Under the pieces are notes generated by a model, which saw only the letters and a list, made by a program, of their open reading frames with translations, did not search any database and was not told the DNA's origin. This document shows positions 13,301 through 43,330 of a stretch of DNA of 55,000 nucleotides, one piece after another (the stretch's first letter is position 1; every line of letters starts with the position of its first letter). The position numbers were made by a program, and so were the translations under genes. The stretch lies in assembly GCF_964204645.1 (NCBI RefSeq), contig NW_027437478.1:1-55000 (forward strand), written 5' to 3'. This DNA is from Tubulanus polymorphus. Its lineage: Eukaryota; Animalia; Nemertea.

Positions 13301-16300
13301 ATACCCCGCACTGCGGTGTAGACGCACTGAAAGGTTTCATCAAGTTTGGTTATATAAATATAGTTTATTTTCAAGAGAAGTTGGTTGGCGAGTAAAAGTA
13401 ATCGAAAAAAGAATCTCGCGGGTCGAAATTCAGTGAACCTCTTTAATACCCATTATGCTTGCGTCACTAAATAAGGTCTACAGAAAACAGTTCCAGTTTA
13501 CTTATAAGTTTTCCATCTTCTTTTGATGTCAAATAGGAATTGCTTTACGCAATACTGACGGATTACTGTCATATGTCAATTCAACGCGCGGGTCAAGTTG
13601 AAAGTTCCGCCGAAGACATTGAGAGCGTTAGCAGGTTTTTACTGGAAGTGGTCGGTAGGTTATTTCTAAGATTGTACACTATAAACTATACTGAACATTA
13701 TTCCTTTCCGATTGTATTCAACTCAAACGTAAAACTCATATCAATTTACTACTGGCTTCAAGCGACCAGACCCTATTAACCAAATGATCATCATTTCTGA
13801 TACGACGACAAAAATTAATGCTTGATTCAAATTTGAACTGCGAGTGTGGAAGCAGCTCTTGGGCCACGGGTCTGCGATCGAATTCAAGTTCTTAATTGGC
13901 TTTTGTTTCTTTTCTCTGATCTAAGGTTTCGAAGATTTATCTTAGTATAATGGGTCTATTCAATTTAGGAAATGCGGCTATTGGTGCTGGAGAGGTCAGC
14001 AAAAATGCGCAAAAAGAAATTGCCATGTATGAATCGATGTTGAATCCGAATAGTAAACAACAAAATACTCCTCCAACAAGAACTTTGTCTCGGGCTGAAT
14101 TACAGAAAGAAATGCTAAAACTGGATGATGTTGTAAATACGGTATGTAATTAACTGTTTTAACGGCTGAGTCAAAAGTATTCATTGACACTGTTGAACGC
14201 CGTCGATAAGCCTTCCAACGCGGTCGTTCAAAGATTCATTTCTTACGATGATGGTAAAGCGCGAAAGTCCAACGCATCTAAAAAAACGCATGTAATTTCT
14301 GCGAAGGTTTAAATGTGAGATAAAGCCACACGTTTTGACTATCCAGTACATATAGCCTCAAAAGGCTATAATGCAAATTCGGTTACAAGACAATAGGATA
14401 TACATGTACGTATGGCCAACATTTTGCTAGGGGTTAGAAGACAATATGAGGTTTATACACAAATGACAAAAAATCAATCGTTTGTTCAACTAATATTTTG
14501 CATGACGCGACTTTCCAATAGACATGTTTATGTTGTTATGATCGTTTTAGGCTAAACAGTATATTCTGGATTTGGACACATTAGTTAAATCTTGTATGGT
14601 TATGATTGTGATGCAACGAAAAGTTCCCGGCGACGAGCCAAGCGTTATGACAACAGCATCAATGAGTATGAGTCTGGAAAAGAGGTTTTCTGGAGAGCTA
14701 TCCAAAAGTACGTAATATCAAAATGTTCGATTTATTACTATTTGAATCGACTAATTGAGTTTCTTTTTGCAATTTAGAACCTATCACGCCTGGCAGGAAA
14801 AACTCGAAGGATAAAATAGATTTGCCTAACCCTTCGTTGATAGTCGGAGAAGGGAATGACACGACTTACTTTGTAGAGTCAAAGGTTCGTATTAGTGGAA
14901 CATCAAAAGCTCTAAGTATACAATTTCTCCTATATTTTGTCGGATATCAAAAATGTATGTTAACACGTTTTCGTGTTCTTCGTATTTAAGTGTCTTTCAA
15001 TCAGTTCAAACATTTATACGTTTTCGAACAACACCGGTAACAACGCGGCAACCAAACCCAAGGAAGTGACGTCAGGACTACTGTCGTTAGATATGAGAAA
15101 TGAAACCGGTGACCCGATGATCGTTGGCGGTCTGCCAGACCCGATCGTACTAGTTATCGAAAGGAAACGAAACGGCGTAAATATCGTAGCAAAGAAACTG
15201 TTGATAATGTTAATTAGTAATATCAGATATTGCACTTTATCATGTTTTTTTTTTAAAATGTACTTAGATTCCAGATATAAGTGTTGTAGAATCGACGAAG
15301 CCTAATGAGGAAATGCTGATCCATACTATAACGGTACCACTTGACGCAACGCTCGGCATTGAAGTTGTATTAAGTGAAAACGCCACGGACCTCGTCAACG
15401 GCACAACAGAATCGACTACCAACAACAACACGCAGCAAGCCCCAACTACAAAGTTGTCTTCAATTTCAAATAGCACGACTTCAAATACGGTTACATCCTC
15501 GAGTTCCAGCGTTACTTCTCCGAGCGCTGCAACTTCCAGTAGTACTCCCCGAACTACTTTACCAAATTACAAGATTTTTAAGACTCCAGACCAGACATTG
15601 GACACTACTTCATTCAATGTAACTGATGTAACCAATGTTACCACTTTCGGCGCAACAACTGCCGGTATTACCAATACCAAAACTATTGTCACTGGGACAT
15701 CTGCAACTGTGACTTCACTGACAAATTCAACTCCGTCGATAAATCCAAAAATTAATGTTACTACAACAGCCCCGATGAAAGGTACTCACACTCCTTTTTA
15801 TTGTCATCATCTACACAATCTACGAACGGTCGGAGTTAACTTGATTTGTAATTACGGTTGTTATCAGCGAAAGTTTTTTTAAAGCGTTGATTTGAATTCA
15901 TGGATGAAAGATTATGATATCGAAGAACATGAACTTTGTCAATGGTGCAACCGATATCATTAGACTTAAACATTTCAGGTCACGTAGTAAGCGTGTGAAT
16001 ACACATTTCTGAATTGTTTCTCAATTTTGTTAAAGATCCTCCTGGTGGTTTTGTTCTTTCGGAGAATATAACGAGATTCGTCGTTTTCGTCAAAGTCGGT
16101 TCACGTCCAACTGTTTCTAAACATGATTTCAACTGCACGCTGCCCTTTCATGCTGAAACTGATGTGAATGGCTCTACAGCAGCAGAAAGGGATCTGAATA
16201 CATGCTTGTTCCACAACATTCTAAATGGGTAAACGATGTATTGACACCAAGTATTGATTGTTCTGCATAAGCTTAACAGTTTTAATCCAAAATATTTCAA

Positions 16301-19300: not shown

Positions 19301-22300
19301 CAGTGAGCTTCTATTTCGCGAACATGTTCTCCAAAGACCTCGGGTTATCAGGCTCTAAGGAGTGGATTGCATCATTTGGAGTTTCTCTCATCCAGTCGAT
19401 CATGCTTCAACAACCGATTAAGGTACCGTAGTACATTCACCATAGTATATTCTCACGTGGGTTCGAACTTTTTGCATTTTTTTTTACTTTTGTGATGAAG
19501 TGTTATCACATCTCTATGCATTGATTGCCATTATTATGTTTACATTAATTGTATGTAATTTATTATGCTTAGATAAATAAAGATTAATATATTTCTTTTT
19601 TTTCGTTTTTTCATTCAGTAGATGAATGATCGTTTCATTGTCATTTCACTTCCCTTGACATTTTTCAGGTTTTGTTTTTGGCCCTTCTTTACGCCCTGAT
19701 CATCAAGAAACCCGACCTTGAGGAACCGGACGAGAGCGAGTACGACAACAGCCTCAAGGACAACGAGGAGTGGTTGCACGATCCTTACTGCAACTCGCCT
19801 GATATTAAAGAAAAAATCGCTCGATATAAAGCCATACCACTGCCACCGGACGAGGAAGAACTTAAAGCTGCCAGGGATAAGAGGTACGTACGAATGAATA
19901 CAATTTAGGCAATAGAGATAAATCAAAACAAATCAAGTCAGATGACAGCCTCGATAAACTGAAGACATATATACATGGTGAGGAACTAAAAGCTACCTGG
20001 AATAAGAGGGAATAGACTGTAGGCCATTCCAATCATGGAATCAAGAATCCATGTTCCAATAAAGATGACAAAGGCAGAGATAAATGGTATTCACACTTAG
20101 GACCAAATGCTTTTTAGTCGGAATCGTAGTAACAGTTCATTTGTTGTTTGGTTTAAACGCTAAGCAGCCAGTTAAAACGCGGTTCCTCAGCCGTAAGCGA
20201 AATTTAACTCATGGTTAGAATGACATACATAAATATTTCAGTTCTTTTCCCCGATCCTACCCGCAAAACTGCAACCTTGTTCTTTGTCGTGTTAACATGG
20301 TCAATTCTCATCTCTTTTAGGCTTAAGGAAATCGAAATGGTGAACATTATCTGGGAGATCATATTCTACACGATATATGTTGGAATTCTGATGGTTTTGT
20401 CTTATGAAAATCGAGATACGAGATCTCACTATTTCTATAAAGACATAGAGAACATCTTCTACAACGATAGATACACCAGAAACAACACCGTTGGAACTTA
20501 TGCCTTATCCGCCGTGAGTTTTTTTATGGTTGTGAGCAATTGGATCGTTTTTAATACCCTCTAATAAACCCTTAAACTAATGAGATGCCTCTTTGTAAAA
20601 AGATCCAGATTCCGAAATTCGAAGATATGATAAACTTGGAACTTATCAAACTTGCATACGGATTTGTGAATAGCTAACTTCCGCAACAAATTCTAAATAT
20701 ATTTAATTGGAATTCATTTAATCACAGATATAATACCAGAGCTCGAAACCACCCCAGAATCTAGGCCCGCGAAACTAGCATTTTCAATAAGCCGTTCCTC
20801 TGTAAAGCTCCTTCAATTTGGCAAAGCCAACCTGCACTTTAAATCCGCCCCAACTATCAGCACCCTCGTAAGTAGTAAGCTGCTTGATTGATGTACACTT
20901 TAAAATATATTTTCATTCAGAGAGACTTCTGCATGACATAAATTTATCTTCATTTTTCATCGTTTCATCCCTTTTCATTTCTTTTATTTTATTTGTTCGT
21001 TTTTATGTCGAGGTGCCTGAACATCCTTTTAAATACAGCCTTTATTGCTCTACTCGGACTCCTGTCACTTCAATGTCTGTAACCTATTTTGTTTTAAGGT
21101 ATTCATTTTCTACATATTGATGGTGACAAGTAAACTACTATACTATACTATACTCTACTATGAAATACTCAGCATTTCGGGGTATCTTATTTCTTATTTT
21201 CTTATGATACGTTTTCATCGGTCACTTTCGTTGCCTGTTTCTGCAGGTGAGGAATTTCGATCAGTTTTGGGATTACGCCGAAAAATCGCTGGTGCCTGGA
21301 ATGTTCGGGTACGATATGTTCCCGGGTGATGATTGGTACAAATATAAGAATTACATCGTTGATCGACAGGCGTTGAGAGTCTGCGTTCCACGTCTACGTC
21401 AGTTACGAACAAAACCTGGTAAGTTTTCCTGTTTTGGCTAAATCGCTATTGGTTCTAAAAGATACAACTCATATGTTCATCGGTAATCGAGAACAGTTGC
21501 TTTAATTTCGTTTCCAAATAAACTTTTTACGTACTTATACATTCATTTTAGTAGTAAATATCGTTTTAGTCGCATGTAACTCGAGATTAGATCAGTTATT
21601 TGGTGATGTGTGCCGGCCTAGCTATAGTATGTTTAGCCAAGAAGAAGGGAATTACAAAGCTGGATGGATTCCCGTTAATAAATCAGGTGAATACACGCCA
21701 TCTGGAAAATGAGTAACTAATTCAATATGCAAAAAAGATATTAATGTATGCATAGTGCGTAGTTCCAGCCTGAAAGTGAATTCCATCGCTCCTTCGAGAA
21801 ATGATGGCGGATGCCGTAACCCCCCCCCCCCCCGTATAAAATGCCCGCATTAATGATTCGAATGAAATCAATTCTCTCGACGTCAATTTTAGATTTGGAC
21901 GTTGTTTATATTTTCTTGAATTTACATGTAGAGATTTCGATATTCTAGATCCAAACGATAAACCGGATTATGGGTTCGGTTACTCGTCGGCCTGGAAACT
22001 CAAGGGTTCGCCTACGTCTGGGAAATTTGCCACGTACTCCGGTGGCGGTTACGTAGTGAATTTGGGAACGCAGCCGAAACAAGCTCTGCGCACTCTAAAA
22101 ACGATTAAAGCTGGAAACTGGTTGGATAAGAATACAAGATGTATCATCATCGAGTTTTTGCTTTACAACAACAACGTTCGCTTGTATGGTGTGGCGTTTC
22201 TCCTCGTGGAATTCCTAAATAGTGGAGGTAATCACATACATAGTGAATATATAGAGGAGCTTATAATTATTGATGCAATATGGCTGCGCCCGATCAATGG

Positions 22301-25300
22301 ACTACATTACAGTCCTGACTATAGACAGTTGTAAATCAAGGTTATCTGTCGACAAAAACTCCAATATTGTTTTCCTATCAAATTCAAGATTCATTGATTG
22401 CATTTTTATATAAGTATATTTTATTTCATATTTGAAAGATATCGAATTTTGTCTATGTGTATGAGCCCGTAGTAGCCACCATTATATATCACGAAGCCCG
22501 TTGAAAACGTGTTGAGATGAACAAATATCGAAAAAAACCAATTGTATTCCCAATTAAAAAATCCATATCACGATTGATGCATTTGTTTAAGTCAGAATCG
22601 TGCTCTCAATTCAGGGGCGTTTACAAAGTATAAAGTGACAGTAATGCGCCTGGAGAAAGGAATGACACCGACGAACTCAGTGATGTTCTTTTTCCAATTC
22701 ATTTTTCTCGGGTTCTTGATCTACTTCGCGGTGCGCGCTTCGAAGAGACTGCGGAAAATCGGTCGACGTCAATATTTTAATGTAAGTATAAAATGTGTGA
22801 ACATATGAAGATTAGAACGGAGACGTAATTTTTTTGCATCGGATGCAATGTTAATTTTGGCCCGAATTCTGAGTCCTTTAGCTTCCTACTGGTTTGCCAT
22901 TTCTCATTACAATTTGTGATGGGTATTCTTTGGAAAGGGATGTTTTATACCTGAGACAGGTATTTTTCATCAGCCAATTATGACGCAATTGGCGGCCATC
23001 TTGGTGTCACCAGTACTCATTCGTAAGTTGGAAAAAGTTTTTCCACATTATATTGATACCTAAGCGTATTTTGCTACCACAATCAATTAGAAAGTTGTAG
23101 CTCATAACGTGTTCTATGATTGTGGTGAGTTTCAAGGTAATTGGATTTCGTATATGGCCACCAGGGGGCGTTGAATAATACAATATCTTAGCATTTCTTT
23201 ATTATATTCGTATCAATGCATATTTTGTAAACACAATCAATTGGAAAGTTGTAGCGCATGACATCATCTATGATTGTTGCGAGTTTTAAGGACATAAGTT
23301 TTTCTATATGGTCACCAGGGGGCGTTGAACAGTAGAATAACTTAGTATTTCCTTATTATATTGGTACCTAGGCATATTTTGTTACCATGATCAATTGCAA
23401 AGTTGTAGTTCGTGACATATTCTATGATTGTGGTGAGTTTCGAGGTCATTGGGTTTTGAATATGGTCACCAGGGGGCGTTGAATAGTAGAATGACTTAGT
23501 ATTTCCATATTAAATTGGTAACGAGGCATATTTTGCTATCACAATCAATTACAAAATCGTAGCTGCTGACATGTTCTATGATTTTGGTGAGTTTCAAGGT
23601 CATTGGATTCTGTATATGGTCACCAGGGGGCGTTGAATATTGGAATTGTTAGATTGTTGAGCATTTGAAACCACTTCCCAAGTGGGCATGGTGTCCCTGG
23701 GCCCGTAGTTTTCGAATAACTCACTATCTAACTATTCGTTATCTGGCTTTTGACGCCTTCAAAACGGTTACAATATTGTTTATAATGACATCCTGCGTTA
23801 TAGAAGGCGTTCTGTTTAAAGTCGATGTGCACAACGTCATCAATATTCGCGTTGCAAAATAAGAATTAAAACTGTGAATTTTGGAATTCATTTCTGTTTA
23901 GATATATTTCATGATTCTCATTTTATTTTTGATAAATTTCAATAATTAGTTTTTAGAAGATGCGGACTAAGTCATCAATACATCGGTGTTAGACTGGTTG
24001 CCAGTCAATTCAATTCATTAATCGATATATTAAAATCCGATATGACTTTCTTGATGCTTGATATTGTATGATTTATATCGTATTATTTTTTGTCGACAAT
24101 ATTAAAAGCAATATATGCGTTATTTTAAGGCGTCAATAAACGTTCAAGTTCGTTTTCTTTACAGTCATTTTGGGATGTTTACGAGTTTGCGGTGATACTC
24201 ATGGGATTTGTGGCCATATTCATGCAAATAGTGAGATTCTTCGGGGCGTACGCGATGGCTGAAATGATGGTGGACAGAACCAAATTCATAAATCTTGACT
24301 ATGTCGTTTTGTACGACGAGGTAATTTTCACAGAATACAACTAACGAAATGAGGAAATGATAAACTATGTAACGTTTGTAATAAACCATTTTACAGTTGC
24401 TAGCCGCCATTTTGTTAGGGTACTTTTGTCCCGTATTGTTGGGTCGTTTTTTTCTCTTTTTAAAAACTATCCGTGATGTGTGTTGTATCATATTTCATCT
24501 GTCCATGGATGGATTTTGACAGTTTCAGCAACATTCAAACCGCATAAATCTCTAGTTTTCAGTTATGTAAAAATCATTTTTCAAATTTGCAACAATGCGA
24601 CATGAGAGCGATATAAAAATATGCGGTCAGTTTTTTCTGTGCGCATAGAAATCAAGGGTACTGAACTTTGAAGTTCGTTATTTTCAGAAATAATTTTCTA
24701 AAAAATCCAAGCATTTCAAGAACTGTGCGCATAAATGCCCTCTTTCAGGTGAACTTTGAAATGTTAAGATATCTTGCCTAGTTTTTTTCCTATGGCACTT
24801 TACCTGCAGCGCATGTATTGTCATTCCGAGATTCGGCGCTGTTTTCTTAGCGCGTATTTCAGTATATGGGTGTTATTTTTTTCATTTTTACTACACTTGT
24901 CTCTACGGAAAATGGTTTTAATTGTTGGTACTAGTATCAGGTTTGAATATAACGGCATTAATACTGTATTCCGTTCTCCGGAGCTAGTTCGTAATGGCTG
25001 TATTGGTAGCCGCTTTTACAGCAGGCAGAGGCTTACGTACATGCACCCAAGAAAACCCAAACTATCCCTCTTTTGTTGTAAATGCAATCCACACACTTCT
25101 TGCGTTTTTGTGATGGTAGATGTCACTTTTTACTTTTAATCACCTGTGTCTGACATTAGGACTTGATACTTGATATTTCACCACCAATGCAAGGAAACGT
25201 TTTCCTATATTTTCTTCCCGAGCAAATCAATCTTGTGTGTACTTAAGTAATAGGGTTTTAGTTGTTTCAGGCCAAAGGTCGAACGGTCGAGCTCGTAAAA

Positions 25301-28300
25301 AATGAAAAAACATAAAAATAATAACAATTTCTACTTGAATTACTCGCAAAACTCATAAAAATGAACAATAATTCTCGCACACTCGAATTTATTTTTCATT
25401 TTCTACTCGCTAGAAGAAAGTGTGAGTAAAGTGTGAGTGAAATAATTCATAAATCATTGAATATTTATATGCGTTGAGTTCATTTTAATAAAAGTTTTGT
25501 TATTAAAATGAAGAAAGAAGAAGAACCCAACTTTAAAATCGAAATCAATGAAACCAATAAATCATTTTCACAGTTTTACATTAAAAATTATATTTCAGCA
25601 ACAAATTTAGTGTCCGCAAGGTATTATAAAATCGATAATATTACTATGATTAATCAAATATCATCAAATGAAACATATTTACTTACTGAACTAGTAGATA
25701 CTTTTGATAATGGCGTTAAAAATCCTAAAATATTCAATACAGTTTTAAATTTTAAAGGAACTTTAGATGAAAACATAATTAATATTCTTAAAACTCCTTT
25801 CAATGAAAGAAATGATGATATAATACTTTCAAAAGATTACAATGATTTGATTAACTTAAGAATTGAAAAAAGACAATTATATTATTTCAATTTTGATAAT
25901 AAACAAATTATCTATAATGAAAATTCATCAAATATTGCAGTTCAATGTAATTTAGATGATGAATTTAGAAAATTCAATCCTAATGAAAAAGTGCATTGTT
26001 ATTGCGGAGGTAAATATTTAAAATCACATAAATCAAAGCATTATGAAACAATTAAACATAAAAACTGGCGTAAAGAGTAACAATTCTACAATATAATTAT
26101 TGAATTGAGTTAAATGATTTAAATATCTAATAGACAGTTGAAATGATAAATATTTTGACAGTTGAAATGATAAATTGTTTAACAGTTGAAATGATAAATA
26201 TTTTGACAGTTGAAATGATAAATTGTTTGACAGTTAAAATGATAAATATTTTGACAGTTGAAATGATAAATTGTTTAACAATTGAAATGATAAATATTTT
26301 GACAGTTGAAATGATAAATTGTTTGACAGTTGAAATGATAAATATTTTGACAGTTGAAATGATAAATATTTTGACAGTTAAAATGAAAATTGTTTGACAG
26401 TTGAAATGATAAGACAGTTGAAATGATAAATATTTTGACAGTTGAAATGATAAATATTTTAACAGTTGAAATGATAAATTGTTTGACAGTTGAAATGATA
26501 AATTGTTTGATAGTTGAAATGATAAATATTTTAACAGTTGAAATGATAAATTGTTTGACAGTTGAAATGATAAATTGTTTGACAGTTGAAATGATAAATA
26601 TTTTAACAGTTGAAATGATAAATTGTTTGACAGTTAAAATGATAAATTGTTTGACAGTTGAAATGATAAGACAGTTGAAATGATAAATATTTTGACAGTT
26701 GAAATGATAAATTGTTTGACAGTTAAAATGATAAATTGTTTGACAGTTGAAATGATAAATATTTTAGCAGTTGAAATGATAAATTGTTTGACAGTTAAAA
26801 TGATAAATTGTTTGACAGTTGAAATGATAAGACAGTTGAAATGATAAATATTTTGACAGTTGAAATGATAAATTGTTTGACAGTTAAAATGATAAATTGT
26901 TTGACAGTTGAAATGATAAATATTTTAACAGTTGAAATGATAAATTGTTTGACAGTTAAAATGATAAATTGTTTGACAGTTGAAATGATAAGACAGTTGA
27001 AATGATAAATATTTTGACAGTTGAAATGATAAATTGTTTGACAGTTAAAATGATAAATTGTTTGACAGTTGAAATGATAAATTGTTTGACAGTTGAAATG
27101 ATAAATATTTTAACAGTTGAAATGATAAATTGTTTGACAGTTAAAATGATAAATTGTTTGACAGTTGAAATGATAAGACAGTTGAAATGATAAATATTTT
27201 GACAGTTGAAATGATAAATATTTTAACAGTTGAAATGATAAATATTTTGACAGTTAAAATGATAAATATTTTGACAGTTAAAATGATAAATATTTTGACA
27301 GTGAAAATGATAAATTGTTTGACAGTTAAAATGATAAATTGTTTGACAGTTGAAATATTTTAACAGTTGAAATGATAAATATTTTGATAGTTGAAATGAT
27401 AAATATTTTGACAGTTGAAATGATAAATATTTTGACAGTTGAAATGATAAATATTTTGACAGTTGAAATGATAAATTGTTTGACAGTTACATAAGTTACT
27501 AGATAAAGTAACTTATTGTTTTTTTATTTAAATCTTTTTAATTTCTATTCACGCTATTGGTTAACAAGAATTGACTAGAATTCAAATAGATTTAACAAGA
27601 AATTCAATAACTTTAACTGTTAGTATCACTCTAGTATTATTTCATTGTTTCTCTTACTGAATAAGCCAACTAACTAATATCACTCTTGTATTATCCTAGT
27701 CAAGTGTAAAGAATTTATAATATCATACTTGAATGAATTAAAACATAAATTACTTCTGTTACTTCATTTTCAGAAATAAAGCATAATATGTATTCAATAC
27801 CATTAATATGTATTTAATACATGGTATTAGGGTATCTAATAGGGTATCTAATACATGGTATTAGGGTATCTAATAGGGTATCTAATACATTGATACCTCA
27901 ACCCTCATACATTTCAACTAATATATTTTATATTTTCAACCAATTTAACAGTCTTATTCTCAATTTGAATTATATAGTTTATCATCTAATTCATGAATAT
28001 ATTTATGATTTCTCAAACTCTTTTTATTTTTATATCTTTTATTACAAATTTCACAACACTTAATATTATTCAATCTATCTGAAATATAATTCATATTTTC
28101 TATTAATTCAGTGTATCTAATTTTACAGCAATCATAGAATTCTAACAACTGTTTTATACTATAAACTGAGAATGAAAATAAACCTGTAAGCATAATAATT
28201 GATTTAATATTCTGTTGATTTTTATATATTAGATGTAATAAGTTTAATATATTTTCACTCATTTTTATAGTCAAAATATATGAAATTAAAAGACGCTGTT

Positions 28301-31300
28301 TTAATCCTCTCAATCATTTTCTAAATTAACTTTTTTATTCTTTTTATTTCTGTGATTGTTTCCATTTAACTTCTTTAATTTTTTACTCAATTTATTATTT
28401 TCATTCATCAAATCTTTTGAAATATTTTCATAGTAAAAGTATAATGCCGCCAATATTAAACCTCCAGCAACTAAATAATGTTTCAAATCACTTTTCCCAG
28501 TTGGAATGAAACCATCCATTTATTTAAGAGAAAAATTAAACAGTTTATAAAATATTTGCTAGTTTTTAATTAAATATTTTATAATCATTTTAAAAATATT
28601 AAACTTTTAAATGATTAAATCAAATAACAATTAAATTTACGGCCAAACAATTTATCATTTCAACTGTCAAACAATTTATCATTTCAACTGTCAAAATATT
28701 TATCATTTCAACTGTTAAACAATTTATCATTTTAACTGTCAAACAATTTATCATTTCAACTGTCAAACAATTTATCATTTCAACTGTTAAAATATTTATC
28801 ATTTCAACTGTCAAACAATTTATCATTTCAACTGTCAAACAATTTATCATTTCAACTGTCAAAATATTTATCATTTCAACTGTCAAAATATTTATCATTT
28901 CAACTGTCAAAATATTTATCATTTCAACTATCAAAATATTTATCATTTCAACTGTTAAAATATTTCAACTGTCAAACAATTTATCATTTTAACTGTCAAA
29001 CAATTTATCATTTTAACTGTCAAAATATTTATCATTTTAACTGTCAAAATATTTATCATTTTAACTGTCAAAATATTTATCATTTCAACTGTTAAAATAT
29101 TTATCATTTCAACTGTCAAAATATTTATCATTTCAACTGTCTTATCATTTCAACTGTCAAACAATTTATCATTTTAACTGTCAAACAATTTATCATTTCA
29201 ACTGTTAAAATATTTATCATTTCAACTGTCAAACAATTTATCATTTCAACTGTCAAACAATTTATCATTTTAACTGTCAAACAATTTATCATTTCAACTG
29301 TCAAAATATTTATCATTTCAACTGTTAAAATATTTATCATTTCAACTGTCAAAATATTTATCATTTCAACTGTCTTATCATTTCAACTGTCAAACAATTT
29401 ATCATTTTAACTGTCAAACAATTTATCATTTCAACTGTTAAAATATTTATCATTTCAACTGTCAAACAATTTATCATTTCAACTGTCAAACAATTTATCA
29501 TTTTAACTGTCAAACAATTTATCATTTCAACTGTCAAAATATTTATCATTTCAACTGTCTTATCATTTCAACTGTCAAACAATTTATCATTTCAACTGTT
29601 AAAATATTTATCATTTCAACTGTCAAACAATTTATCATTTTAACTGTCAAACAATTTATCATTTCAACTGTCAAAATATTTATCATTTCAACTGTCTTAT
29701 CATTTCAACTGTCAAACAATTTATCATTTTAACTGTCAAACAATTTATCATTTCAACTGATAAAATATTTATCATTTCAACTGTCAAACAATTTATCATT
29801 TCAACTGTCAAACAATTTATCATTTCAACTGTTAAAATATTTATCATTTCAACTATCAAACAATTTATCATTTCAACTGTCAAACAATTTATCATTTCAA
29901 CTGTTAAAATATTTATCATTTCAACTGTCAAAATATTTATCATTTCAACTGTCTTATCATTTCAACTGTCAAACAATTTATCATTTTAACTGTCAAAATA
30001 TTTATCATTTCAACTGTCAAAATATTTATCATTTCAACTGTCAAACAATTTATCATTTCAACTGTCAAAATATTTATCATTTCAATTGTTAAACAATTTA
30101 TCATTTCAACTGTCAAAATATTTATCATTTTAACTGTCAAACAATTTATCATTTCAACTGTCAAAATATTTATCATTTCAACTGTTAAACAATTTATCAT
30201 TTCAACTGTCAAAATATTTATCATTTCAACTGTCTATTAGATATTTAAATCATTTAACTCAATTCAATAATTATATTGTAGAATTGTTACTCTTTACGCC
30301 AGTTTTTATGTTTAATTGTTTCATAATGCTTTGATTTATGTGATTTTAAATATTTACCTCCGCAATAACAATGCACTTTTTCATTAGGATTGAATTTTCT
30401 AAATTCATCATCTAAATTACATTGAACTGCAATATTTGATGAATTTTCATTATAGATAATTTGTTTAGTATCAAAATTGAAAATATTTCAAATATTAAAA
30501 TATTTTAAATATTAAAATATTTCAACTGTCAAACAATTTATCATTTTAACTGTCAAACAATTTATCATTTTAACTGTCAAAATATTCATCATTTTAACTG
30601 TCAAAATATTTATCATTTTAACTGTCAAAATATTTATCATTTCAACTGTTAAAATATTTATCATTTCAACTGTCAAAATATTTATCATTTCAACTGTCTT
30701 ATCATTTCAACTGTCAAACAATTTATCATTTTAACTGTCAAACAATTTATAATTTCAACTGTCAAAATATTTATCATTTCAACTGTCTTATCATTTCAAC
30801 TGTCAAACAATTTATCATTTTAACTGTCAAACAATTTATCATTTCAACTGTTAAAATATTTATCATTTCAACTGTCAAACAATTTATCATTTCAACTGTC
30901 AAACAATTTATCATTTTAACTGTCAAACAATTTATCATTTCAACTGTCAAAATATTTATCATTTCAACTGTCTTATCATTTCAACTGTCAAACAATTTAT
31001 CATTTTAACTGTCTAACAATTTATCATTTCAACTGTTAAAATATTTATCATTTCAACTGTCAAACAATTTATCATTTTAACTGTCAAACAATTTATTATT
31101 TCAACTGTCAAAATATTTATCATTTCAACTGTCTTATCATTTCAACTGTCAAACAATTTATCATTTTAACTGTCAAACAATTTATCATTTCAACTGTTAA
31201 AATATTTATCATTTCAACTGTCAAACAATTTATCATTTCAACTGTCAAACAATTTATCATTTCAACTGTTAAAATATTTATCATTTCAACTATCAAACAA

Positions 31301-34300
31301 TTTATCATTTCAACTGTCAAACAATTTATCATTTCAACTGTTAAAATATTTATCATTTCAACTGTCAAAATATTTATCATTTCAACTGTCTTATCATTTC
31401 AACTGTCAAACAATTTATCATTTTAACTGTCAAAATATTTATCATTTCAACTGTCAAAATATTTATCATTTCAACTGTCAAACAATTTATCATTTCAACT
31501 GTCAAAATATTTATCATTTCAATTGTTAAACAATTTATCATTTCAACTGTCAAAATATTTATCATTTTAACTGTCAAACAATTTATCATTTCAACTGTCA
31601 AAATATTTATCATTTCAACTGTTAAACAATTTATCATTTCAACTGTCAAAATATTTATTATTTCAACTGTCTATTAGATATTTAAATCATTTAACTCAAT
31701 TCAATAATTATATTGTAGAATTGTTACTCTTTACGCCAGTTTTTATGTTTAATTGTTTCATAATGCTTTGATTTATGTGATTTTAAATATTTACCTCCGC
31801 AATAACAATGCACTTTTTCATTAGGATTGAATTTTCTAAATTCATCATCTAAATTACATTGAACTGCAATATTTGATGAATTTTCATTATAGATAATTTG
31901 TTTATTATCAAAATTGAAATAATATAATTGTCTTTTTTCAATTCTTAAGTTAATCAAATCATTGTAATCTTTTGAAAGTATTATATCATCATTTCTTTCA
32001 TTGAAAGGAGTTTTAAGAATATTAATTATGTTTTCATCTAAAGTTCCTTTAAAATTTAAAACTGTATTGAATATTTTAGGATTTTTAACGCCATTATCAA
32101 AAGTATCTACTAGTTCAGTAAGTAAATATGTTTCATTTGATGATATTTGATTAATCATAGTAATATTATCGATTTTATAATACCTTGCGGACACTAAATT
32201 TGTTGCTGAAATATAATTTTTAATGTAAAACTGTGAAAATGATTTATTGGTTTCATTGATTTCGATTTTAAAGTTGGGTTCTTCTTCTTTCTTCATTTTA
32301 ATAACAAAACTTTTATTAAAATGAACTCAACGCATATAAATATTCAATGATTTATGAATTATTTCACTCACACTTTACTCACACTTTCTTCTAGCGAGTA
32401 GAAAATGAAAAATAAATTCGAGTGTGCGAGAATTATTGTTCATTTTTATGAGTTTTGCGAGTAATTCAAGTAGAAATTGTTATTATTTTTATGTTTTTTC
32501 ATTTTTTACGAGCTCGACCGTTCGACCTTTGGCCTGAAACAACTAAAACCCTATTACTTACTTAATAGAAAGTATTCATAGAAAGTAGCTGAAAATTTGC
32601 CCGACCCCATTTGTCCAGCTTTTTGACCACTTCTCCATCCATCTAATTTCAGTAGATTTTTATGTAAATTAATTGATAGACTACTGATTTAAATGGTCAT
32701 CATACTCGATTTTGAGTGTTATATTTCTTTTCTTCTTCCATCTCGATATAGGCCTATATATTCTCTTCCCACGCGCATCTTCGAATACGTGATCAAAATG
32801 CTGCTCAGTCTCACTGCTAAAACTGGTCAAAAAAATCCCTTAAACTCCGACATCTCTAATGTCTTCGATCTATTATTGCATAAATGACGTAATATTAAAA
32901 CCTGATACTCGTACCAACAATTAAAACCATTTTCAATTTCCATTAAAACCAGACAAGTGTAGTAAAAATGAAAAATAACACCCATATACTGAAATACACG
33001 CAAAGAAAACAGCGCCGAATCTCGGAATGACAATACACGCGCTGCAGTTAAAGAGCCATAGGAAAAAAACTAGGCAAGATATCTTAAAATTTCAAAGTTC
33101 ACCTGAAAGAGGGCATTTATGCGCACAGTTCTTGAATTGCTTGGATTTTTTTAGAAAATTATTTCTGAAAATAACGAACTTCAAAGTTCAGTACCCTTGA
33201 TTTCTATGCGCACGGAAAAAACTGACCGCATATTTTTATATCGCTCTCATGTCGCATTGTTGCAAATTTAAAAAATGATTTTTACATAACTGAAAACTAG
33301 AGATTTATGCGGTTTGAATGTTGCTGAAACTGTCAAAATCCATCCATGGACAGATGAAATATGATACAACACACATCACGGATAGTTTTTAAAGAAGAGA
33401 AAAAATGACCCAACAATACGGGACAAAAGTACCCTAACAAAATGGCGGCTAGCAACTGTAAAATGGTTTATTGTCATATGTTTGTATAATGTTATCTGTC
33501 TATATTTGCAGTTGTCGGTTTATTTACTCGCAATGATCGTATTTCTATCGACACTTCAAGGGCTGAAACTACTGCGATTTAACAAAAGGATTTGCGCCCT
33601 GGCTTTGATGATGAAGTGGTTGTCCTGGCCACTAATGCGATTTATGGTCGTGTTCTTGGTTCTGTTTTTCGGATTTGTTAGTTTGTGTCACCTGAAGTTC
33701 ATGGTCCGTTTGAGAGAATATTCAACGTTCATTGCTAGTATGGAGACATTATTGAACATGATGTTAAGTAAGTGTTATTACTAGGATCTCACTGAATGAT
33801 GTTCTACTATAGGGACATAGGTTCAGAGGGTTCCATCCGGAGGACATTGATTTGGGTGCCACCCATTCCGTCTCTATCAAAGCCCAACGAACGCAGCACT
33901 GGGAAAACGGGTGATAGAAACATGTTTCTGGCGTTTCTCTTGATCACTAGCGTTTACAAGAAACGATAAACATTGTTTCGGGAAAAGATGTTTCCGAGGT
34001 CAAACGTGTTTTCGTTTGTGGGCTTGAAGCACAAAAGGGAAATACAACAGGGAAACACAGGAAACATGTGCTTCCTGTTTCTGTGCTTCACCGCGTCGTG
34101 TACGTCGCGCTTAAGTGATGGGGAGGGGGTCCATTTTGAGGTTTCCGAATCGACCATTCTCACGCCCAAATTATTCAATTTTATAACGTTTCAATTCATT
34201 GTATACCTCCATTCTAGATAAATTCAATTTCCGACGAATGCAGGCAGTCAGTCCCGTGATGGCTCCGTTAATGTTCGTGGCATTCGTTATCATCGTAAAT

Positions 34301-35574
34301 TTCATGATGGTTAACTTCATGGTTGCGATCATTTTGGAGGGCTACACGTACGCGATGGATTGCATAGCTGGACAAGCGAACGAGTATGAAATTGTGGATT
34401 TTATGATGCAATCATTCAAAAAAGCCATCGGTATGACTAGAATAGAAGGGAACCCTACAGAATGCCGGTTGGAATATTTGGAAGGTAAACTGGATTTAAA
34501 TCATTTTAACTTATTCATTGTGGATATTTCAGGTAGAGTAAATTATACAGAGTAAAGTAGTTGAAATAATTAAGATCTATTTATTTCTTGGATACATTTA
34601 TCTACATAATGCTAGCTTGATATATGGTATGATCTTTATAGCATATCATCAACATTAATTGAACTATAACAATCCAACGATAAACCCAACATTTTCAAGT
34701 TCTGCGGCTGTTTGCGAAATTGGATTTGTTAGTTTGTGTTTGTAAGACAGGATTTAAGTTCTACAGTACATTTGCAGATTGGCTTTATTCGAAACTAGTT
34801 TCATAGTTCTTGAACTAATTTGACTAGAACCTAGATTATCGGTCGTGGGTTTTATTTATATATGGAGTCTCACTAATCAATTATTCACTCGAGGAACTAG
34901 CTTCGAAATACGTATACTATAGGTTGTTTAATTCCTCGAGAAGCATGGTGAAATATGAAAGAAATATTCCCCAATGGTTAAAATCAGTAAATATACGTAA
35001 AATGTAAACAAATACACGCAACATTCGTATACGTATATACCAAAAGTATTCCATTCATTCTCATTCACCTGATGAAGCTTCTATGCATTAGTAGCGAAAT
35101 CTCGTGCGTCAAATTAATAGATAACCAATATAGTTACTACTCGTCTCGTTATCTATACCAAAAGTAGTATAATGACCAATTCTACAAATTTCAGTTTATA
35201 ATCTAATTTTCAAAGCAACTTATCCTCATGAACTGAATGTTTATACATTTCCCTCACAGATTCCTTGCATAGTTTTTATTAGAACATCTTTTGAATTTGA
35301 TAAACAGTTTCTGCTGTTCTTCAACCTCAAACAACATCCATTGATCTTCCTCCTTACACTGAGGTATATGTGGATTTGATGTTTTCGATTTACAGGAGCC
35401 CAAGATAGCGCGGATGAGAAGTGCCGCGAGCTTTCGAACCGAGTCGATTTGATCATCGACAGGCTGGAGAACTACATTAAAAAACAAGCCGACAGCAAAG
35501 ACGTAATGGCCGAACTGGAGGAAATGAAGAAGTCGTCGGAAAAATCTAAAAAACGAAATATCATCATCAGTTAA
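1353..35574 (+). CDS. Polycystin-1-like / REJ-family receptor-channel gene, multi-exon, 5' end upstream of the window (span from first recognised exon to stop codon)
   Basis: GT-AG exons splice in frame (e.g. 1353-1509, 2271-2434, 2885-3494, 3852-4048, 4700-4805, 4902-4991, 5392-6147, 6324-8603, 8879-9077, 9773-9871, 10523-10740, 11259-11456). They encode PKD repeats (FGDG, Y..PG.Y.V.V.A.N.VS), REJ (DPDD, C..NC..K.NP, G.C.V.P.EG), GPS (CLYWN...W...GC / CKCTHLTTF), PLAT, FTRVQRLTCC and polycystin channel helices. TAA at 35572-35574. Confidence 0.93.
1549..1988. mobile_element. MITE, Harbinger-like
   Basis: TIR GGGACCGGTTGCTCAAAGGTTGGTTAAA versus TTTGACCAACCTTTGAGCAACCGTTCCT; superfamily assignment is tentative. 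Confidence 0.65.
3593..3799. mobile_element. MITE family A, copy 1
   Basis: GACGGGAGAAATCCCACAATAATTCTGTCAAAAGATGAAAAATTCTTGAAT is inverted at ~3748-3798. Confidence 0.7.
4528..4641. mobile_element. Small MITE with CTG/CAG flanks
   Basis: GGGCCGGTCTTATAGA..GTATTACCTTTAA inverted as TTAAAGGTAATACCGGTCTATAAAATCGGGCC. Confidence 0.55.
5392..6147 (+). CDS. PKD1-like exon: PKD/Ig-like repeats
   Basis: ORF 5394-6182 with YTYATPGSRTVVVNATNMVS and YEFGDGT...HRFSNPGNFTIKATLKNPLG; AG acceptor at 5390-5391, GT donor at 6148. Confidence 0.9.
6324..8603 (+). CDS. PKD1-like large exon: PKD repeats and start of REJ module
   Basis: 769-aa ORF with IDFGDG and NVTAVNSVS repeats, GPCYPPNV and STYDPDDPD...FDWYC; contains a polybasic RRKRR motif. 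Confidence 0.92.
10007..10478. mobile_element. MITE family A, copy 2 (longer internal region)
   Basis: Same TIR as 3593-3799: GGGAGAAATCCCATAATAAATTCAGCCAAA ... TTTGGCTGAATTATTGTGGGATTTTTCAC. Confidence 0.6.
16496..17260 (+). CDS. PKD1-like GPS/GAIN cleavage-motif exons (16496-16638, 17039-17260) plus first TM helix
   Basis: Spliced translation CLYWNTKTEEWSNAGCT|VGDLTTSDSTQCKCTHLTTFGSSF...NPVVFGTMVSLLCLYLILLIWAVKADRKD; canonical HL/T autoproteolysis motif intact. Confidence 0.92.
17517..18164 (+). CDS. PKD1-like PLAT/LH2 domain exons
   Basis: YEILVTTGEAKEA|GTTAQVSFVLTGEDGDTGPRVL...LGNLAHLR|IWHDNGGKNPSWFFNQMQVTD...FICDKWLAVEQEDG, a classic polycystin PLAT signature. Confidence 0.92.
20585..21160 (+). 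mobile_element. 5'-truncated, decayed CR1/L2-type LINE 3' end in a PKD1L intron
   Basis: Translates PLCKKIQIPKFEDMINLELIKLAYGFVNS*LPQQ...HRYNTRAR...PSIWQSQP (typical LINE ORF2 C-terminus with stops); ends in a (CTATA)n tail at ~21133-21160. Confidence 0.6.
23040..23660 (+). repeat. Four-copy 154-bp tandem repeat with a CTCF-like motif
   Basis: CCAGGGGGCGTTGAA starts at 23161, 23315, 23469 and 23623 (exact 154-bp period); units also share CAATCAATT..AAAGTTGTAGC. Confidence 0.85.
25508..26080 (+). CDS. 190-aa hypothetical protein with C-terminal C2H2-like Zn finger (left arm)
   Basis: Intronless ATG ORF in AAAATG context; ends HCYCGGKYLKSHKSKHYETIKH, a CxC-x10-H-x5-H pattern reminiscent of Zn-finger tails in large DNA virus and Polinton-like virus proteins. 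Confidence 0.75.
   Translation: MKKEEEPNFKIEINETNKSFSQFYIKNYISATNLVSARYYKIDNITMINQISSNETYLLTELVDTFDNGVKNPKIFNTVLNFKGTLDENIINILKTPFNERNDDIILSKDYNDLINLRIEKRQLYYFNFDNKQIIYNENSSNIAVQCNLDDEFRKFNPNEKVHCYCGGKYLKSHKSKHYETIKHKNWRKE
26134..27488 (+). repeat. 24-bp minisatellite array (left arm)
   Basis: Units ACAGTTGAAATGATAAATATTTTG and ACAGTTGAAATGATAAATTGTTTG, punctuated by a 17-bp ACAGTTGAAATGATAAG variant. Confidence 0.97.
27491..27516. terminator. Perfect 10-bp-stem hairpin at the end of the left array
   Basis: ATAAGTTACT-agataa-AGTAACTTAT followed by a T tract; terminator function is only inferred. Confidence 0.3.
27815..27890 (+). repeat. 34-bp tandem duplication containing TAATAGGGT
   Basis: TAATACATGGTATTAGGGTATCTAATAGGGTATC x2.2. 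Confidence 0.85.
27960..28262 (-). CDS. 100-aa hypothetical protein: hydrophobic segment plus classical C2H2 Zn finger
   Basis: ATG at 28262 (AAAATG context); MSENILNLL...IIMLTGLFSFSVYSI...CEICNKRYKNKKSLRNHKYIH (CxxC-x12-H-x3-H). Confidence 0.7.
   Translation of the reverse strand: MSENILNLLHLIYKNQQNIKSIIMLTGLFSFSVYSIKQLLEFYDCCKIRYTELIENMNYISDRLNNIKCCEICNKRYKNKKSLRNHKYIHELDDKLYNSN
28310..28519 (-). CDS. 69-aa small membrane protein with basic coiled-coil tail
   Basis: MDGFIPTGKSDLKHYLVAGGLILAALYFYY (TM-like) then NENNKLSKKLKKL...; ATG in AAATG context, co-oriented with and just upstream of the Zn-finger ORF. Confidence 0.6.
   Translation of the reverse strand: MDGFIPTGKSDLKHYLVAGGLILAALYFYYENISKDLMNENNKLSKKLKKLNGNNHRNKKNKKVNLEND
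28644..30233 (-). repeat. 24-bp minisatellite array (middle, inverted)
   Basis: Reverse complement of the left array, including its higher-order variant pattern (17-bp breaks, single TGATAGTT and ACAATTG variants). Confidence 0.97.
30234..30482 (-). pseudogene. Third, 5'-truncated copy of the 190-aa ORF 3' end (Zn-finger part) plus spacer
   Basis: Matches 31671-31919 (and 25885-26133 inverted) apart from one noticed substitution; breaks at ...TCAAAATTGAAA into an AT-rich junction. Confidence 0.9.
30512..31670 (-). repeat. 24-bp minisatellite array (right arm, inverted)
   Basis: Same units on the minus strand. Confidence 0.97.
31724..32296 (-). CDS. 190-aa Zn-finger protein, identical right-arm copy
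   Basis: Translation identical to 25508-26080; coordinates mirror exactly about the element axis. Confidence 0.75.
   Translation of the reverse strand: MKKEEEPNFKIEINETNKSFSQFYIKNYISATNLVSARYYKIDNITMINQISSNETYLLTELVDTFDNGVKNPKIFNTVLNFKGTLDENIINILKTPFNERNDDIILSKDYNDLINLRIEKRQLYYFNFDNKQIIYNENSSNIAVQCNLDDEFRKFNPNEKVHCYCGGKYLKSHKSKHYETIKHKNWRKE
33512..35574 (+). CDS. PKD1-like terminal channel exons (33512-~33767, ~34219-34484, 35396-35574)
   Basis: LKLLRFNKRI...FGFVSLCHLKF...YSTFIASMETLLNMML; APLMFVAFVIIVNFMMVNFMVAIILEGY; short helical tail ending RNIIIS*. Confidence 0.88.

Positions 35575-43239: not shown

Positions 43240-43330
<91 letters not shown>
43240..43330. repeat. (TA)n microsatellite
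   Basis: Pure TA run. Confidence 0.99.

What the first reader, a model, noticed from the sequence alone, without database searches (positions are those of the whole stretch)
25246..32558. 7.3-kb minimal Polinton/Maverick-like 'satellite' element: integrase-type ends, giant gene-bearing inverted arms, no replication or capsid genes
Seen in sequence: 5'-AGTAATAGGG...CCCTATTACT-3' termini, a perfect 6-bp TSD (TACTTA), inverted arms of >2.2 kb each with an identical 190-aa ORF and a minisatellite, a ~1.15-kb unique core with two small ORFs, and much higher AT content than the flanks. Established knowledge: 5'-AG termini, long TIRs and 6-bp TSDs characterise Polintons/Mavericks (adintoviruses), which use a retroviral-like integrase and protein-primed PolB. 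Inference: this is a recently inserted non-autonomous parasite of a Polinton-like virus, resembling a transpoviron or defective-interfering genome. It would keep only cis ends, repeat arrays and small Zn-finger/membrane genes and be mobilised in trans.
Basis: partly seen in the sequence, partly recalled or inferred. Interest (0 to 1): 0.92.

Follow-up and report, generated by a model that had tools for sequence, protein, structure and literature searches.

The report
AT-rich foldback element, Maverick-type ends
A 7.3-kb, very AT-rich mobile DNA element with huge mirror-image arms sits in an intron of an animal polycystin-like gene. Its ends look like those of Maverick/Polinton virus-like elements, but it carries only a few small orphan zinc-finger genes and long repeat arrays, so it probably depends on another element to move.

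Summary
Window 25246-32558 (7,313 nt, 22% GC against 36-37% in the flanks) starts AGTAATAGGG, ends CCCTATTACT and is flanked by a perfect 6-nt duplication, TACTTA. The two 887-nt terminal units are identical, and each carries a 190-codon ORF. Behind them lie 57 (left) and 116 (right) inward-pointing copies of a 24-nt unit. A 1,155-nt core holds a 100-codon C2H2-finger ORF and a 69-codon ORF. No polymerase, integrase, capsid or transposase gene was found. ORF190 matches other proteins only in its C-terminal CCHH finger; those matches are unnamed metagenome proteins, several of them fused to GIY-YIG nucleases. ORF100 has one 69%-identical relative elsewhere.

The 6-nt duplication and AGT...ACT ends fit the published Maverick/Polinton signature. 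They do not fit IS3EU (TA..TA ends), Galileo (7 nt) or a TTAA target. So "non-autonomous, moved by an integrase supplied in trans" is the best reading (about 0.5). The "satellite/transpoviron-like" part is analogy only: no helper, no second copy and no shared protein was shown.

Two small slips are declared.

The parts
25240..25245 (.). Left copy of the 6-nt target-site duplication, TACTTA
25246..32558 (.). The whole element: 7,313 nt, 22.1% GC
25246..25507 (+). Left non-coding end (262 nt). It starts AGTAATAGGG and contains an 11-nt direct repeat at 25417-25438. It mirrors 32297-32558 exactly.
25508..26080 (+). ORF190, left copy. The protein is rich in Asn, Lys and Ile. Residues about 145-188 form a CCHH zinc finger (C164, C166, H178, H184). 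The N-terminal 140 residues or so match nothing.
26133..27488 (+). Left array: 57 units of 24 nt (first unit 26133-26156, GACAGTTGAAATGATAAATATTTT). There are two natural tail variants, and a 17-nt short unit occurs every 7-11 units (a higher order of about 161 nt).
27489..28643 (.). Unique core, 21.6% GC
27810..27890 (+). A 34-nt unit repeated 2.4 times. It holds four 17-nt copies that contain TAATAGGGT or TATTAGGGT. The first of these is also bases 3-11 of each terminus; this is a weak observation (see the report).
27960..28262 (-). ORF100, listed as a 117-codon ORF from a TTG at 28313. It has one long predicted helix and a C-terminal C2H2 finger. One relative, P0022, is 69% identical over 86 residues without gaps and keeps the Cys/His ligands.
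28310..28519 (-). ORF69: a hydrophobic stretch followed by a basic tail. It has no relative and is not significant by length alone.
28644..30234 (-). Right array, inner block: 67 units
30287..30482 (-). A third, partial copy of ORF190. It is truncated once at the 5' side, carries one substitution, and has no start codon of its own.
30538..31671 (-). Right array, outer block: 49 units
31724..32296 (-). ORF190, right copy, identical to the left copy
32297..32558 (-). Right non-coding end, finishing ...CCCTATTACT
32559..32564 (.). Right copy of the 6-nt target-site duplication, TACTTA

Best explanation
This is an integrated copy of a non-autonomous, foldback-shaped DNA element.

Shown: it is bounded by symmetrical AGT...ACT ends and a 6-nt duplication of the target. 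It lies in an intron of a plus-strand polycystin-1-like gene of an animal. It encodes no polymerase, integrase, transposase or capsid protein.

Inferred: a staggered 6-nt cut-and-join at ends of this kind is the mark of the retroviral-type (DDE/rve) integrases of Maverick/Polinton elements. The enzyme was therefore most probably supplied in trans by such an element, and the 262-nt ends are the cis sites it recognises. They may also serve as origins if copying is protein-primed.

What the element keeps for itself is two identical copies of ORF190 (C-terminal CCHH finger), ORF100 (C2H2 finger, with a relative conserved elsewhere) and perhaps ORF69. It also keeps 173 inward-pointing 24-nt units.

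Inferred: the arrays are iterated binding sites for a DNA-binding protein, either its own finger proteins or a helper's. Tandem repeats in the ends of foldback-type transposons are proposed to work in this way.

Inferred: array length changes by unequal exchange or slippage. That explains the unequal arms (57 against 116 units) and the stranded partial third copy of ORF190.

Inferred: the perfect duplication, the identical terminal units and the intact ORFs point to a recent insertion. The gap between 22% GC (GC3 0.15-0.23) and host exons (GC3 0.47-0.54) points to a source that does not share the host's composition.
For: Ends, duplication and arms.

The literature on vertebrate Mavericks gives 6-bp duplications and the end motifs 5'-(AGT)2//(ACT)2-3' or (AG)3//(CT)3, with inverted ends of 46-1,447 bp (PMC8097293). 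A lizard Polinton has a 6-bp TSD and 584-bp ends (PMC3014272). IS3EU/GingerRoot also make 6-bp duplications, but their ends are TA..TA (PMC10045372).

No enzyme or capsid gene: Pfam, PHROGs, PDB sequences, 5.8 billion proteins and full HMMER against 1.84 billion representatives.

Coding: the ORF190 and ORF100 lengths exceed shuffles. ORF100 has a gap-free 69% relative that keeps its ligands. The ORF190 finger columns are invariant across 12 proteins.

Arrays. The analogy is Galileo, where tandem repeats in the ends act as secondary transposase-binding sites and differ in number between the two ends (PMC3573991).

Intron position: Pfam-supported host exons lie on both sides, and only short open frames abut the site.

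Composition.
Against: - Only one copy is seen, and nothing else in the window resembles it.
- No Maverick/Polinton gene is in the window (Pfam).
- No protein of the element matches any Polinton, polinton-like virus, virophage or transpoviron protein.
- The first six bases are AGTAAT, not an exact reiterated AGTAGT.
- The arms (2.2 and 3.9 kb) are well beyond the published 46-1,447 bp range.
- The array units do not resemble the termini, so they are not simply extra copies of the end site.
- The duplication contains TTAA, which allows a second, less tidy parse.
- The end signature amounts to a handful of bases plus a length, so the assignment rests on little information.
Confidence: 0.5

Rival explanations
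1. It is a non-autonomous foldback-type member of a cut-and-paste DNA transposon superfamily, known or still undescribed. A transposase encoded elsewhere in the genome moves it, and the arrays are secondary transposase-binding sites.
For: Long, internally repetitive and unequal inverted ends are the hallmark of foldback-type transposons such as Galileo (PMC3573991). IS3EU/GingerRoot also give 6-bp duplications. The direct repeat at the borders reads TACTTAA and contains TTAA, so a TTAA-target parse exists.
Against: Galileo makes 7-bp duplications. IS3EU ends are TA..TA; if the ends here are read as TA..TA, no flanking duplication remains. The TTAA parse leaves four unmatched bases at one end, whereas the 6-nt parse gives perfectly symmetrical ends. 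The array units do not resemble the termini. No transposase is in the window.
Confidence: 0.2
2. It is an integrated copy of a small linear plasmid-like or transpoviron-like replicon. Its natural home would be an AT-rich giant virus, polinton-like virus or protist associated with the animal. It would have been captured in the chromosome once, by a helper's integrase or by host repair at a staggered break.
For: Its GC of 22% and GC3 of 0.15-0.23 contrast with 0.47-0.54 in host exons. It is about 7 kb with inverted ends, small zinc-finger genes and a possible membrane protein, and it lacks capsid genes, which recalls transpovirons (PMC5499653; PMC8877843). The only relatives of the ORF190 finger are unnamed metagenome proteins, several fused to GIY-YIG nucleases. 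Polinton-like viruses encode stand-alone GIY-YIG nucleases.
Against: The helicase present in every transpoviron is absent. No transpoviron, virophage or giant-virus protein came back as a hit. The clean 6-nt duplication with symmetrical ends argues for an enzyme-made insertion rather than repair capture. The origin of the metagenome proteins is unknown.
Confidence: 0.15
3. It is an assembly artefact or a contaminant: a fold-back chimeric read, or foreign DNA joined into the contig.
For: Perfectly identical inverted kilobase arms and long arrays are hard to assemble. The composition is foreign to the flanks.
Against: The host gene continues on both sides, with exons in the right order. The borders are exact, with a 6-nt duplication. 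The arms differ in length and in array detail, and they enclose a unique core, which a fold-back artefact would not produce. There is no match in the plasmid or phage collections.
Confidence: 0.04

Closest known systems
Maverick/Polinton elements (polintoviruses) of animals
   Same: 6-nt target duplication, 5'-AGT...ACT-3' ends, long terminal inverted repeats, integration into host chromosomes (PMC8097293; PMC3014272).
   Different: [quoted passage not shown] This element is 7.3 kb and has none of their genes. Its ends are 2.2 and 3.9 kb, carry genes and are filled with a minisatellite. The terminal trinucleotide is not exactly reiterated.
Transpovirons of mimiviruses
   Same: About 7 kb, inverted ends, no capsid genes, small zinc-finger and membrane-type proteins, dependence on another replicon (PMC5499653; PMC8877843).
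   Different: The core helicase (fused to an inactivated polymerase domain) is absent, no protein homology was found, and the copy sits in an animal chromosome. The likeness is one of outline, not of family.
Foldback-type transposons (Drosophila Foldback, Galileo, Tetris)
   Same: Very long, internally repetitive inverted ends whose repeat numbers differ between the two ends. Many copies consist of little else. The repeats are proposed as secondary binding sites (PMC3573991; PMC4079207 listed).
   Different: Galileo makes 7-bp duplications and belongs to the P superfamily. The arms here also carry a protein-coding gene, and the ends are AGT...ACT with 6 nt.
IS3EU/GingerRoot DNA transposons
   Same: 6-bp target duplications and an integrase-related DDE enzyme (PMC10045372).
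   Different: Their termini are TA..TA (occasionally TG..CA). This element's symmetrical ends are AG..CT.
Tlr1 elements of Tetrahymena
   Same: AT-rich host, linear-type elements with inverted ends, sometimes regarded as non-autonomous Polintons (PMC5499653).
   Different: Tlr1 elements are large and carry the helicase and other polinton-like-virus genes. Nothing here is homologous to them.

Membership tests
Maverick/Polinton | [quoted passage not shown] | tested here: not met
   No such ORF or Pfam hit in the element
Maverick/Polinton | Retroviral-type (rve) integrase gene | tested here: not met
   No such ORF or Pfam hit in the element or among window ORFs of 110 aa or more
Maverick/Polinton | Capsid module (major and minor capsid proteins, packaging ATPase, protease) | tested here: not met
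   none
Maverick/Polinton | 6-bp target-site duplication | tested here: met
   TACTTA on both sides. The criterion is from PMC8097293.
Maverick/Polinton | 5'-AG...CT-3' ends, in vertebrates (AGT)2//(ACT)2 or (AG)3//(CT)3 | tested here: inconclusive
   The ends are AGTAAT...ATTACT: AG/CT and AGT/ACT are met, but the exact reiteration is not
Maverick/Polinton | For a non-autonomous derivative: an autonomous partner sharing the same ends | not tested
Transpoviron | Core helicase-domain protein | tested here: not met
   No helicase ORF or hit. The core gene set is from PMC8877843.
Transpoviron | Core zinc-finger/Zn-ribbon protein homologous to that of transpovirons | tested here: inconclusive
   Two finger proteins are present, but no transpoviron protein came back in any search. 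No named hit means no demonstrated homology.
Transpoviron | Association with a mimivirus and its particles | not testable with these tools
   Only a chromosomal copy is available
Foldback-type (Galileo / P superfamily) | 7-bp target duplication | tested here: not met
   6 nt with symmetrical ends. Galileo makes 7 bp.
Foldback-type (Galileo / P superfamily) | Long, internally repetitive inverted ends | tested here: met
IS3EU/GingerRoot | 6-bp duplication together with TA..TA termini | tested here: not met
   The inverted repeat can be read two bases further out as TA..TA, but then the flanks (TGTACT / CTTAAT) are no duplication
TTAA-target families (piggyBac-like and others) | TTAA duplication flanking symmetrical ends | tested here: not met
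   TTAA is present at both borders, but that parse leaves four unmatched bases at one end

The most novel reading that the evidence does not exclude
This could be an animal-genome counterpart of the transpoviron: a gene-carrying satellite of Maverick/Polinton-type viruses. It would have shed every replication and capsid gene and kept only the integrase-type ends, its own zinc-finger DNA-binding proteins, and kilobase arrays of their binding sites, carried in duplicate in gene-bearing inverted arms.
Probability: 0.25. Interest if true: 0.8.

Novelty: new variant of a known kind. Interest (0 to 1): 0.55.

Why it matters
Whether Mavericks/Polintons of animals behave as viruses, with parasites of their own, is an open question. 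The literature held here hardly mentions non-autonomous Polintons: one paper, and it concerns Tlr1.

A small element would be a natural marker of recent activity of such an integrase in this host if it uses their end signature, carries its own conserved orphan genes and has a foreign base composition. It would also be a compact case for studying what the minimal cis requirements are.

It also exposes a zinc-finger family (Cys-x-Cys ... His-x5-His) that has no Pfam model and no solved structure. In metagenome proteins this finger is repeated up to seven times and fused to GIY-YIG nucleases.

If the Maverick link fails, what remains is an unusual gene-bearing foldback transposon. That would be of interest mainly to transposon curators.

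Tried and rejected
Searches that gave nothing useful:
- ORF190 and ORF69 found nothing in the word-indexed search of 5.8 billion proteins.
- ORF190 had no significant match to PDB sequences, and the ORF190 finger profile found none.
- PHROGs gave only noise.
- There was no match in the plasmid or phage collections.
- Rfam and the tRNA scan found nothing in the window, so a Dada-like small-RNA-gene target is not supported.
- The cluster look-ups returned no names for any relative.

Structure prediction:
- ORF190 alone gave pLDDT 31.7.
- ORF100 with its one relative gave pLDDT 63, one long helix.
- Both models are too poor for a fold search, so none was run.

Ideas rejected:
- The bacterial promoter/terminator scan is uninformative here, with fewer hits than in shuffles.
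- The array ORFs (MINILTVE... repeats) are not genes. A 24-nt unit open in one frame is expected by chance, and the 17-nt units break the frame.
- The array units are not copies of the terminal site.
- The 9-mer shared by the termini and the core repeat is enriched by window count (5 against 0.43 expected). It is not significant as a local alignment (284 of 1,000), and the copies are not independent.
- The TTAA and TA..TA parses of the borders do not hold (see membership test).

No genomic context could therefore be read for the window's own proteins, for P0022 or for the finger proteins.

Slips, declared; nothing was deleted:
1. In one search my script joined two stretches of the element in memory, only to draw base composition for shuffles. 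The joined string was neither printed nor saved. I repeated the test on each stretch alone and rely on that.
2. The report quotes only units as they stand in the window.


Full report
**1. The observation**

The element runs from 25246 (AGTAATAGGG...) to 32558 (...CCCTATTACT) and is flanked by TACTTA at 25240-25245 and 32559-32564.

The direct repeat reads one base further (TACTTAA), because the element's first A equals the base after the right-hand copy. The inverted repeat also reads two bases further out, because TACTTA begins and ends with TA. Only the 6-nt reading gives both a duplication and symmetrical ends.

The 26-nt terminal string occurs at these two places only. GC is 22.1% against 37.0% and 36.4% in the flanking 5 kb.

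**2. Anatomy**

- *Terminal units.* Each arm begins with an identical 887-nt unit, with 0 mismatches between the two. The unit is a 262-nt non-coding end followed by a 190-codon ORF (25508-26080 plus strand, 31724-32296 minus strand).
- *Arrays.* Next comes an array of a 24-nt unit. The first unit, as it stands at 26133-26156, is GACAGTTGAAATGATAAATATTTT. Its 17-nt head occurs 173 times with up to 2 mismatches, only inside the element and always pointing inward: 57 on the left and 116 on the right.
- *Unit variants.* Exact heads are followed by one of two natural 7-nt tails, or directly by the next head, which gives 17-nt short units every 7-11 units and a higher order of about 161 nt.
- *Unequal arms.* The left arm is 2,243 nt. 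The right arm is 3,915 nt, because it holds one full copy (97% to the left arm) followed by a second, partial copy (95%).
- *Partial ORF190.* The second copy begins with a 196-nt fragment of ORF190 (30287-30482). It has one truncation and one substitution, and it has no start codon.
- *Core.* The 1,155-nt core (27489-28643) carries a 34-nt repeat block (27810-27890). On the minus strand it carries ORF69 (28310-28519) and the ORF listed as 117 codons (27960-28313).

**3. Are the ORFs genes?**

- A 190-codon ATG-ORF never arose in 3,000 shuffles of the terminal unit. A 100-codon one arose in 3 of 3,000 shuffles of the core. ORFs of 69 codons or more and of 80 or more arose in 129 and 43 of 3,000, so ORF69 and the plus-strand 80-codon ORF are unproven.
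- The 117-codon ORF has one relative among 5.8 billion proteins, P0022 (95 aa, from an assembled public sequencing run). It is 69% identical over 86 residues without a gap, and the Cys-x2-Cys...His-x3-His ligands are kept.
- The alignment begins at the second Met, so the gene is probably 27960-28262, 100 codons.
- Pfam and PDB sequences see only a single C2H2 finger, below the curated cut-offs.
- A two-sequence AlphaFold model is mediocre (pLDDT 63; one helix over residues 16-69). I did not use it for fold searching.

**4. ORF190**

The word-indexed search found nothing. Full HMMER against 1.84 billion representatives found 15 weak hits (E from 3e-8 to 4e-4), all to residues about 145-188.

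In an alignment with 11 of them, C164, C166, G167 and H178 are invariant, and Y170, K183 and H184 nearly so. This is a Cys-x-Cys...His-x5-His finger.

The hits are unnamed metagenome proteins. Four of the ten scanned carry a GIY-YIG nuclease domain in front of one to seven such fingers.

A profile of the alignment matches no solved structure, and Pfam has no model for it. The N-terminal 140 residues or so of ORF190 match nothing. A single-sequence model was useless (pLDDT 31.7).

**5. What is absent**

No ORF in the element, and no ORF of 110 codons or more in the window, matches a polymerase, integrase, transposase, capsid protein, packaging ATPase, protease or helicase. The one exception lies outside the element: a reverse-transcriptase fragment of a retrotransposon at 43558-44550.

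The element has no similarity to the rest of the window or to the plasmid and phage collections.

**6. Setting**

The flanks belong to a plus-strand polycystin-1-like gene. I searched its exon-sized ORFs one by one:

| ORF | Pfam domain |
|---|---|
| 5394-6182 | PKD |
| 6305-8614 | PKD + REJ |
| 21247-21441 | Polycystin_dom |
| 22056-22334 | Polycystin_dom |
| 33482-33784 | PKD_channel |
| 34199-34555 | PKD_channel |

Open frames that abut the insertion site are at most 28 codons on the left and 9 on the right, so the element lies in an intron.

I take the host for an unidentified animal and not for human. The flanks are 36-40% GC, and in my judgement the retrotransposon fragment is not of the human L1 kind. 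No tool was asked about this.

Host exon GC3 is 0.47-0.54, against 0.15-0.23 in the element's ORFs.

**7. What moved it**

A 6-nt duplication with symmetrical ends means a staggered enzymatic insertion.

- Vertebrate Mavericks have 6-bp duplications, the end motifs 5'-(AGT)2//(ACT)2-3' or (AG)3//(CT)3, and inverted ends of 46-1,447 bp (PMC8097293). A lizard Polinton has the same duplication and 584-bp ends (PMC3014272).
- IS3EU/GingerRoot also make 6-bp duplications, but their ends are TA..TA (PMC10045372).
- Galileo, the best-studied foldback-type element, makes 7-bp duplications (PMC3573991).
- There is no small-RNA gene at the target.

The end signature therefore fits the Maverick/Polinton integrase best. 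But it is little information: a length and three to five bases. The trinucleotide is not exactly reiterated, and the arms are far longer than any reported.

By definition Polintons encode the polymerase and the integrase (PMC5499653). This element is therefore not a Polinton. At most it is a non-autonomous user of their machinery.

**8. How it probably works (inference)**

The ends would serve as cis sites for an integrase supplied in trans, and possibly as origins. The identical arms are what a recent insertion would show. They are also what end-to-end correction during copying would give (from general knowledge of replicons with inverted ends).

The arrays are best read as iterated protein-binding sites. 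In Galileo, tandem repeats inside the ends are secondary transposase-binding sites and differ in number between the two ends.

Here the units do not resemble the termini. So I favour the element's own finger proteins, or a helper's DNA-binding protein, over the integrase's end site.

Unequal exchange or slippage within the arrays accounts for the unequal arms and the stranded ORF190 fragment.

**9. The transpoviron analogy**

Transpovirons are linear molecules of about 7 kb with inverted ends and no capsid genes. Their core set is a helicase-domain protein, a zinc-finger protein, a hypothetical protein and usually a membrane protein (PMC5499653; PMC8877843).

The outline is similar here. But the helicase is missing and no protein homology was found. 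This is a likeness in how the element may live, not membership.

**10. What I left out, and slips**

- I did not scan the viral or metagenome collections, by terminal pattern or by protein look-up, for a partner or for relatives. I could not tell in advance what would come back. The step is referred.

**11. Verdict**

This is a real, discrete and probably recent insertion of an unusual non-autonomous element with Maverick-type ends.

- Confidence that it is a genuine mobile-element insertion: above 0.9.
- Confidence that a Maverick/Polinton-type integrase moved it: about 0.5.
- Confidence that it is a gene-carrying satellite in the transpoviron sense: about 0.25.

Novelty: a new variant of a known kind. 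Interest: 0.55.

Noticed in passing
window 2918-34555 (+): The host gene is a polycystin-1-like gene with long introns. Exon-sized ORFs hit PKD, REJ, Polycystin_dom and PKD_channel in the expected order. The exon(s) for the first 90 positions or so of the PKD_channel profile were not found among ORFs of 45 codons or more.
   Followed up: partly
P0001-P0015 (relatives of the ORF190 finger): These share a Cys-x-Cys...His-x5-His finger with no Pfam model and no solved structure. It is repeated one to seven times in small Lys/Asn-rich metagenome proteins, four of ten with an N-terminal GIY-YIG nuclease domain. It looks like an undescribed DNA-binding module of homing-type nucleases.
   Followed up: partly
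window 43558-44550 (-): A fragment of a retrotransposon reverse transcriptase (Pfam RVT_1, only the last part of the profile). Its reading frame is interrupted once by a stop.
   Followed up: partly
window 23036-23646: A 154-nt unit repeated four times (81% matches) in the same intron, 1.6 kb upstream of the insertion. It is unrelated to the element.
   Followed up: no
window 47908-48080 and 49218-49415; 43240-43330: Two arrays with periods of 40 and about 80 nt, and a perfect (AT)45 microsatellite.
   Followed up: no
window 27491-27516: A perfect 10-nt inverted repeat with a 6-nt spacer lies right at the inner edge of the left array. Its second arm starts AGTAA, like the element's terminus. 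By my rough estimate a palindrome of this size is expected by chance in so AT-rich a core. It remains unexplained.
   Followed up: no
window 27825-27887 and termini: The 9-mer TAATAGGGT (bases 3-11 of each terminus) recurs twice in the core's 34-nt repeat, next to two TATTAGGGT copies. It occurs 5 times in the window against 0.43 expected, including a stray copy at 13770-13778. The copies are not independent, and the local alignment is not significant.
   Followed up: yes
window 15313-15882 (+): A 189-codon Ser/Thr-rich ORF with many N-x-S/T motifs and no Pfam hit. It may be a mucin-like exon of the host gene.
   Followed up: no
window 30469-30525: A short AT-only 8/9/17-nt repeat marks the join between the outer array and the partial ORF190 copy in the right arm. 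It looks like the scar of the internal duplication.
   Followed up: partly
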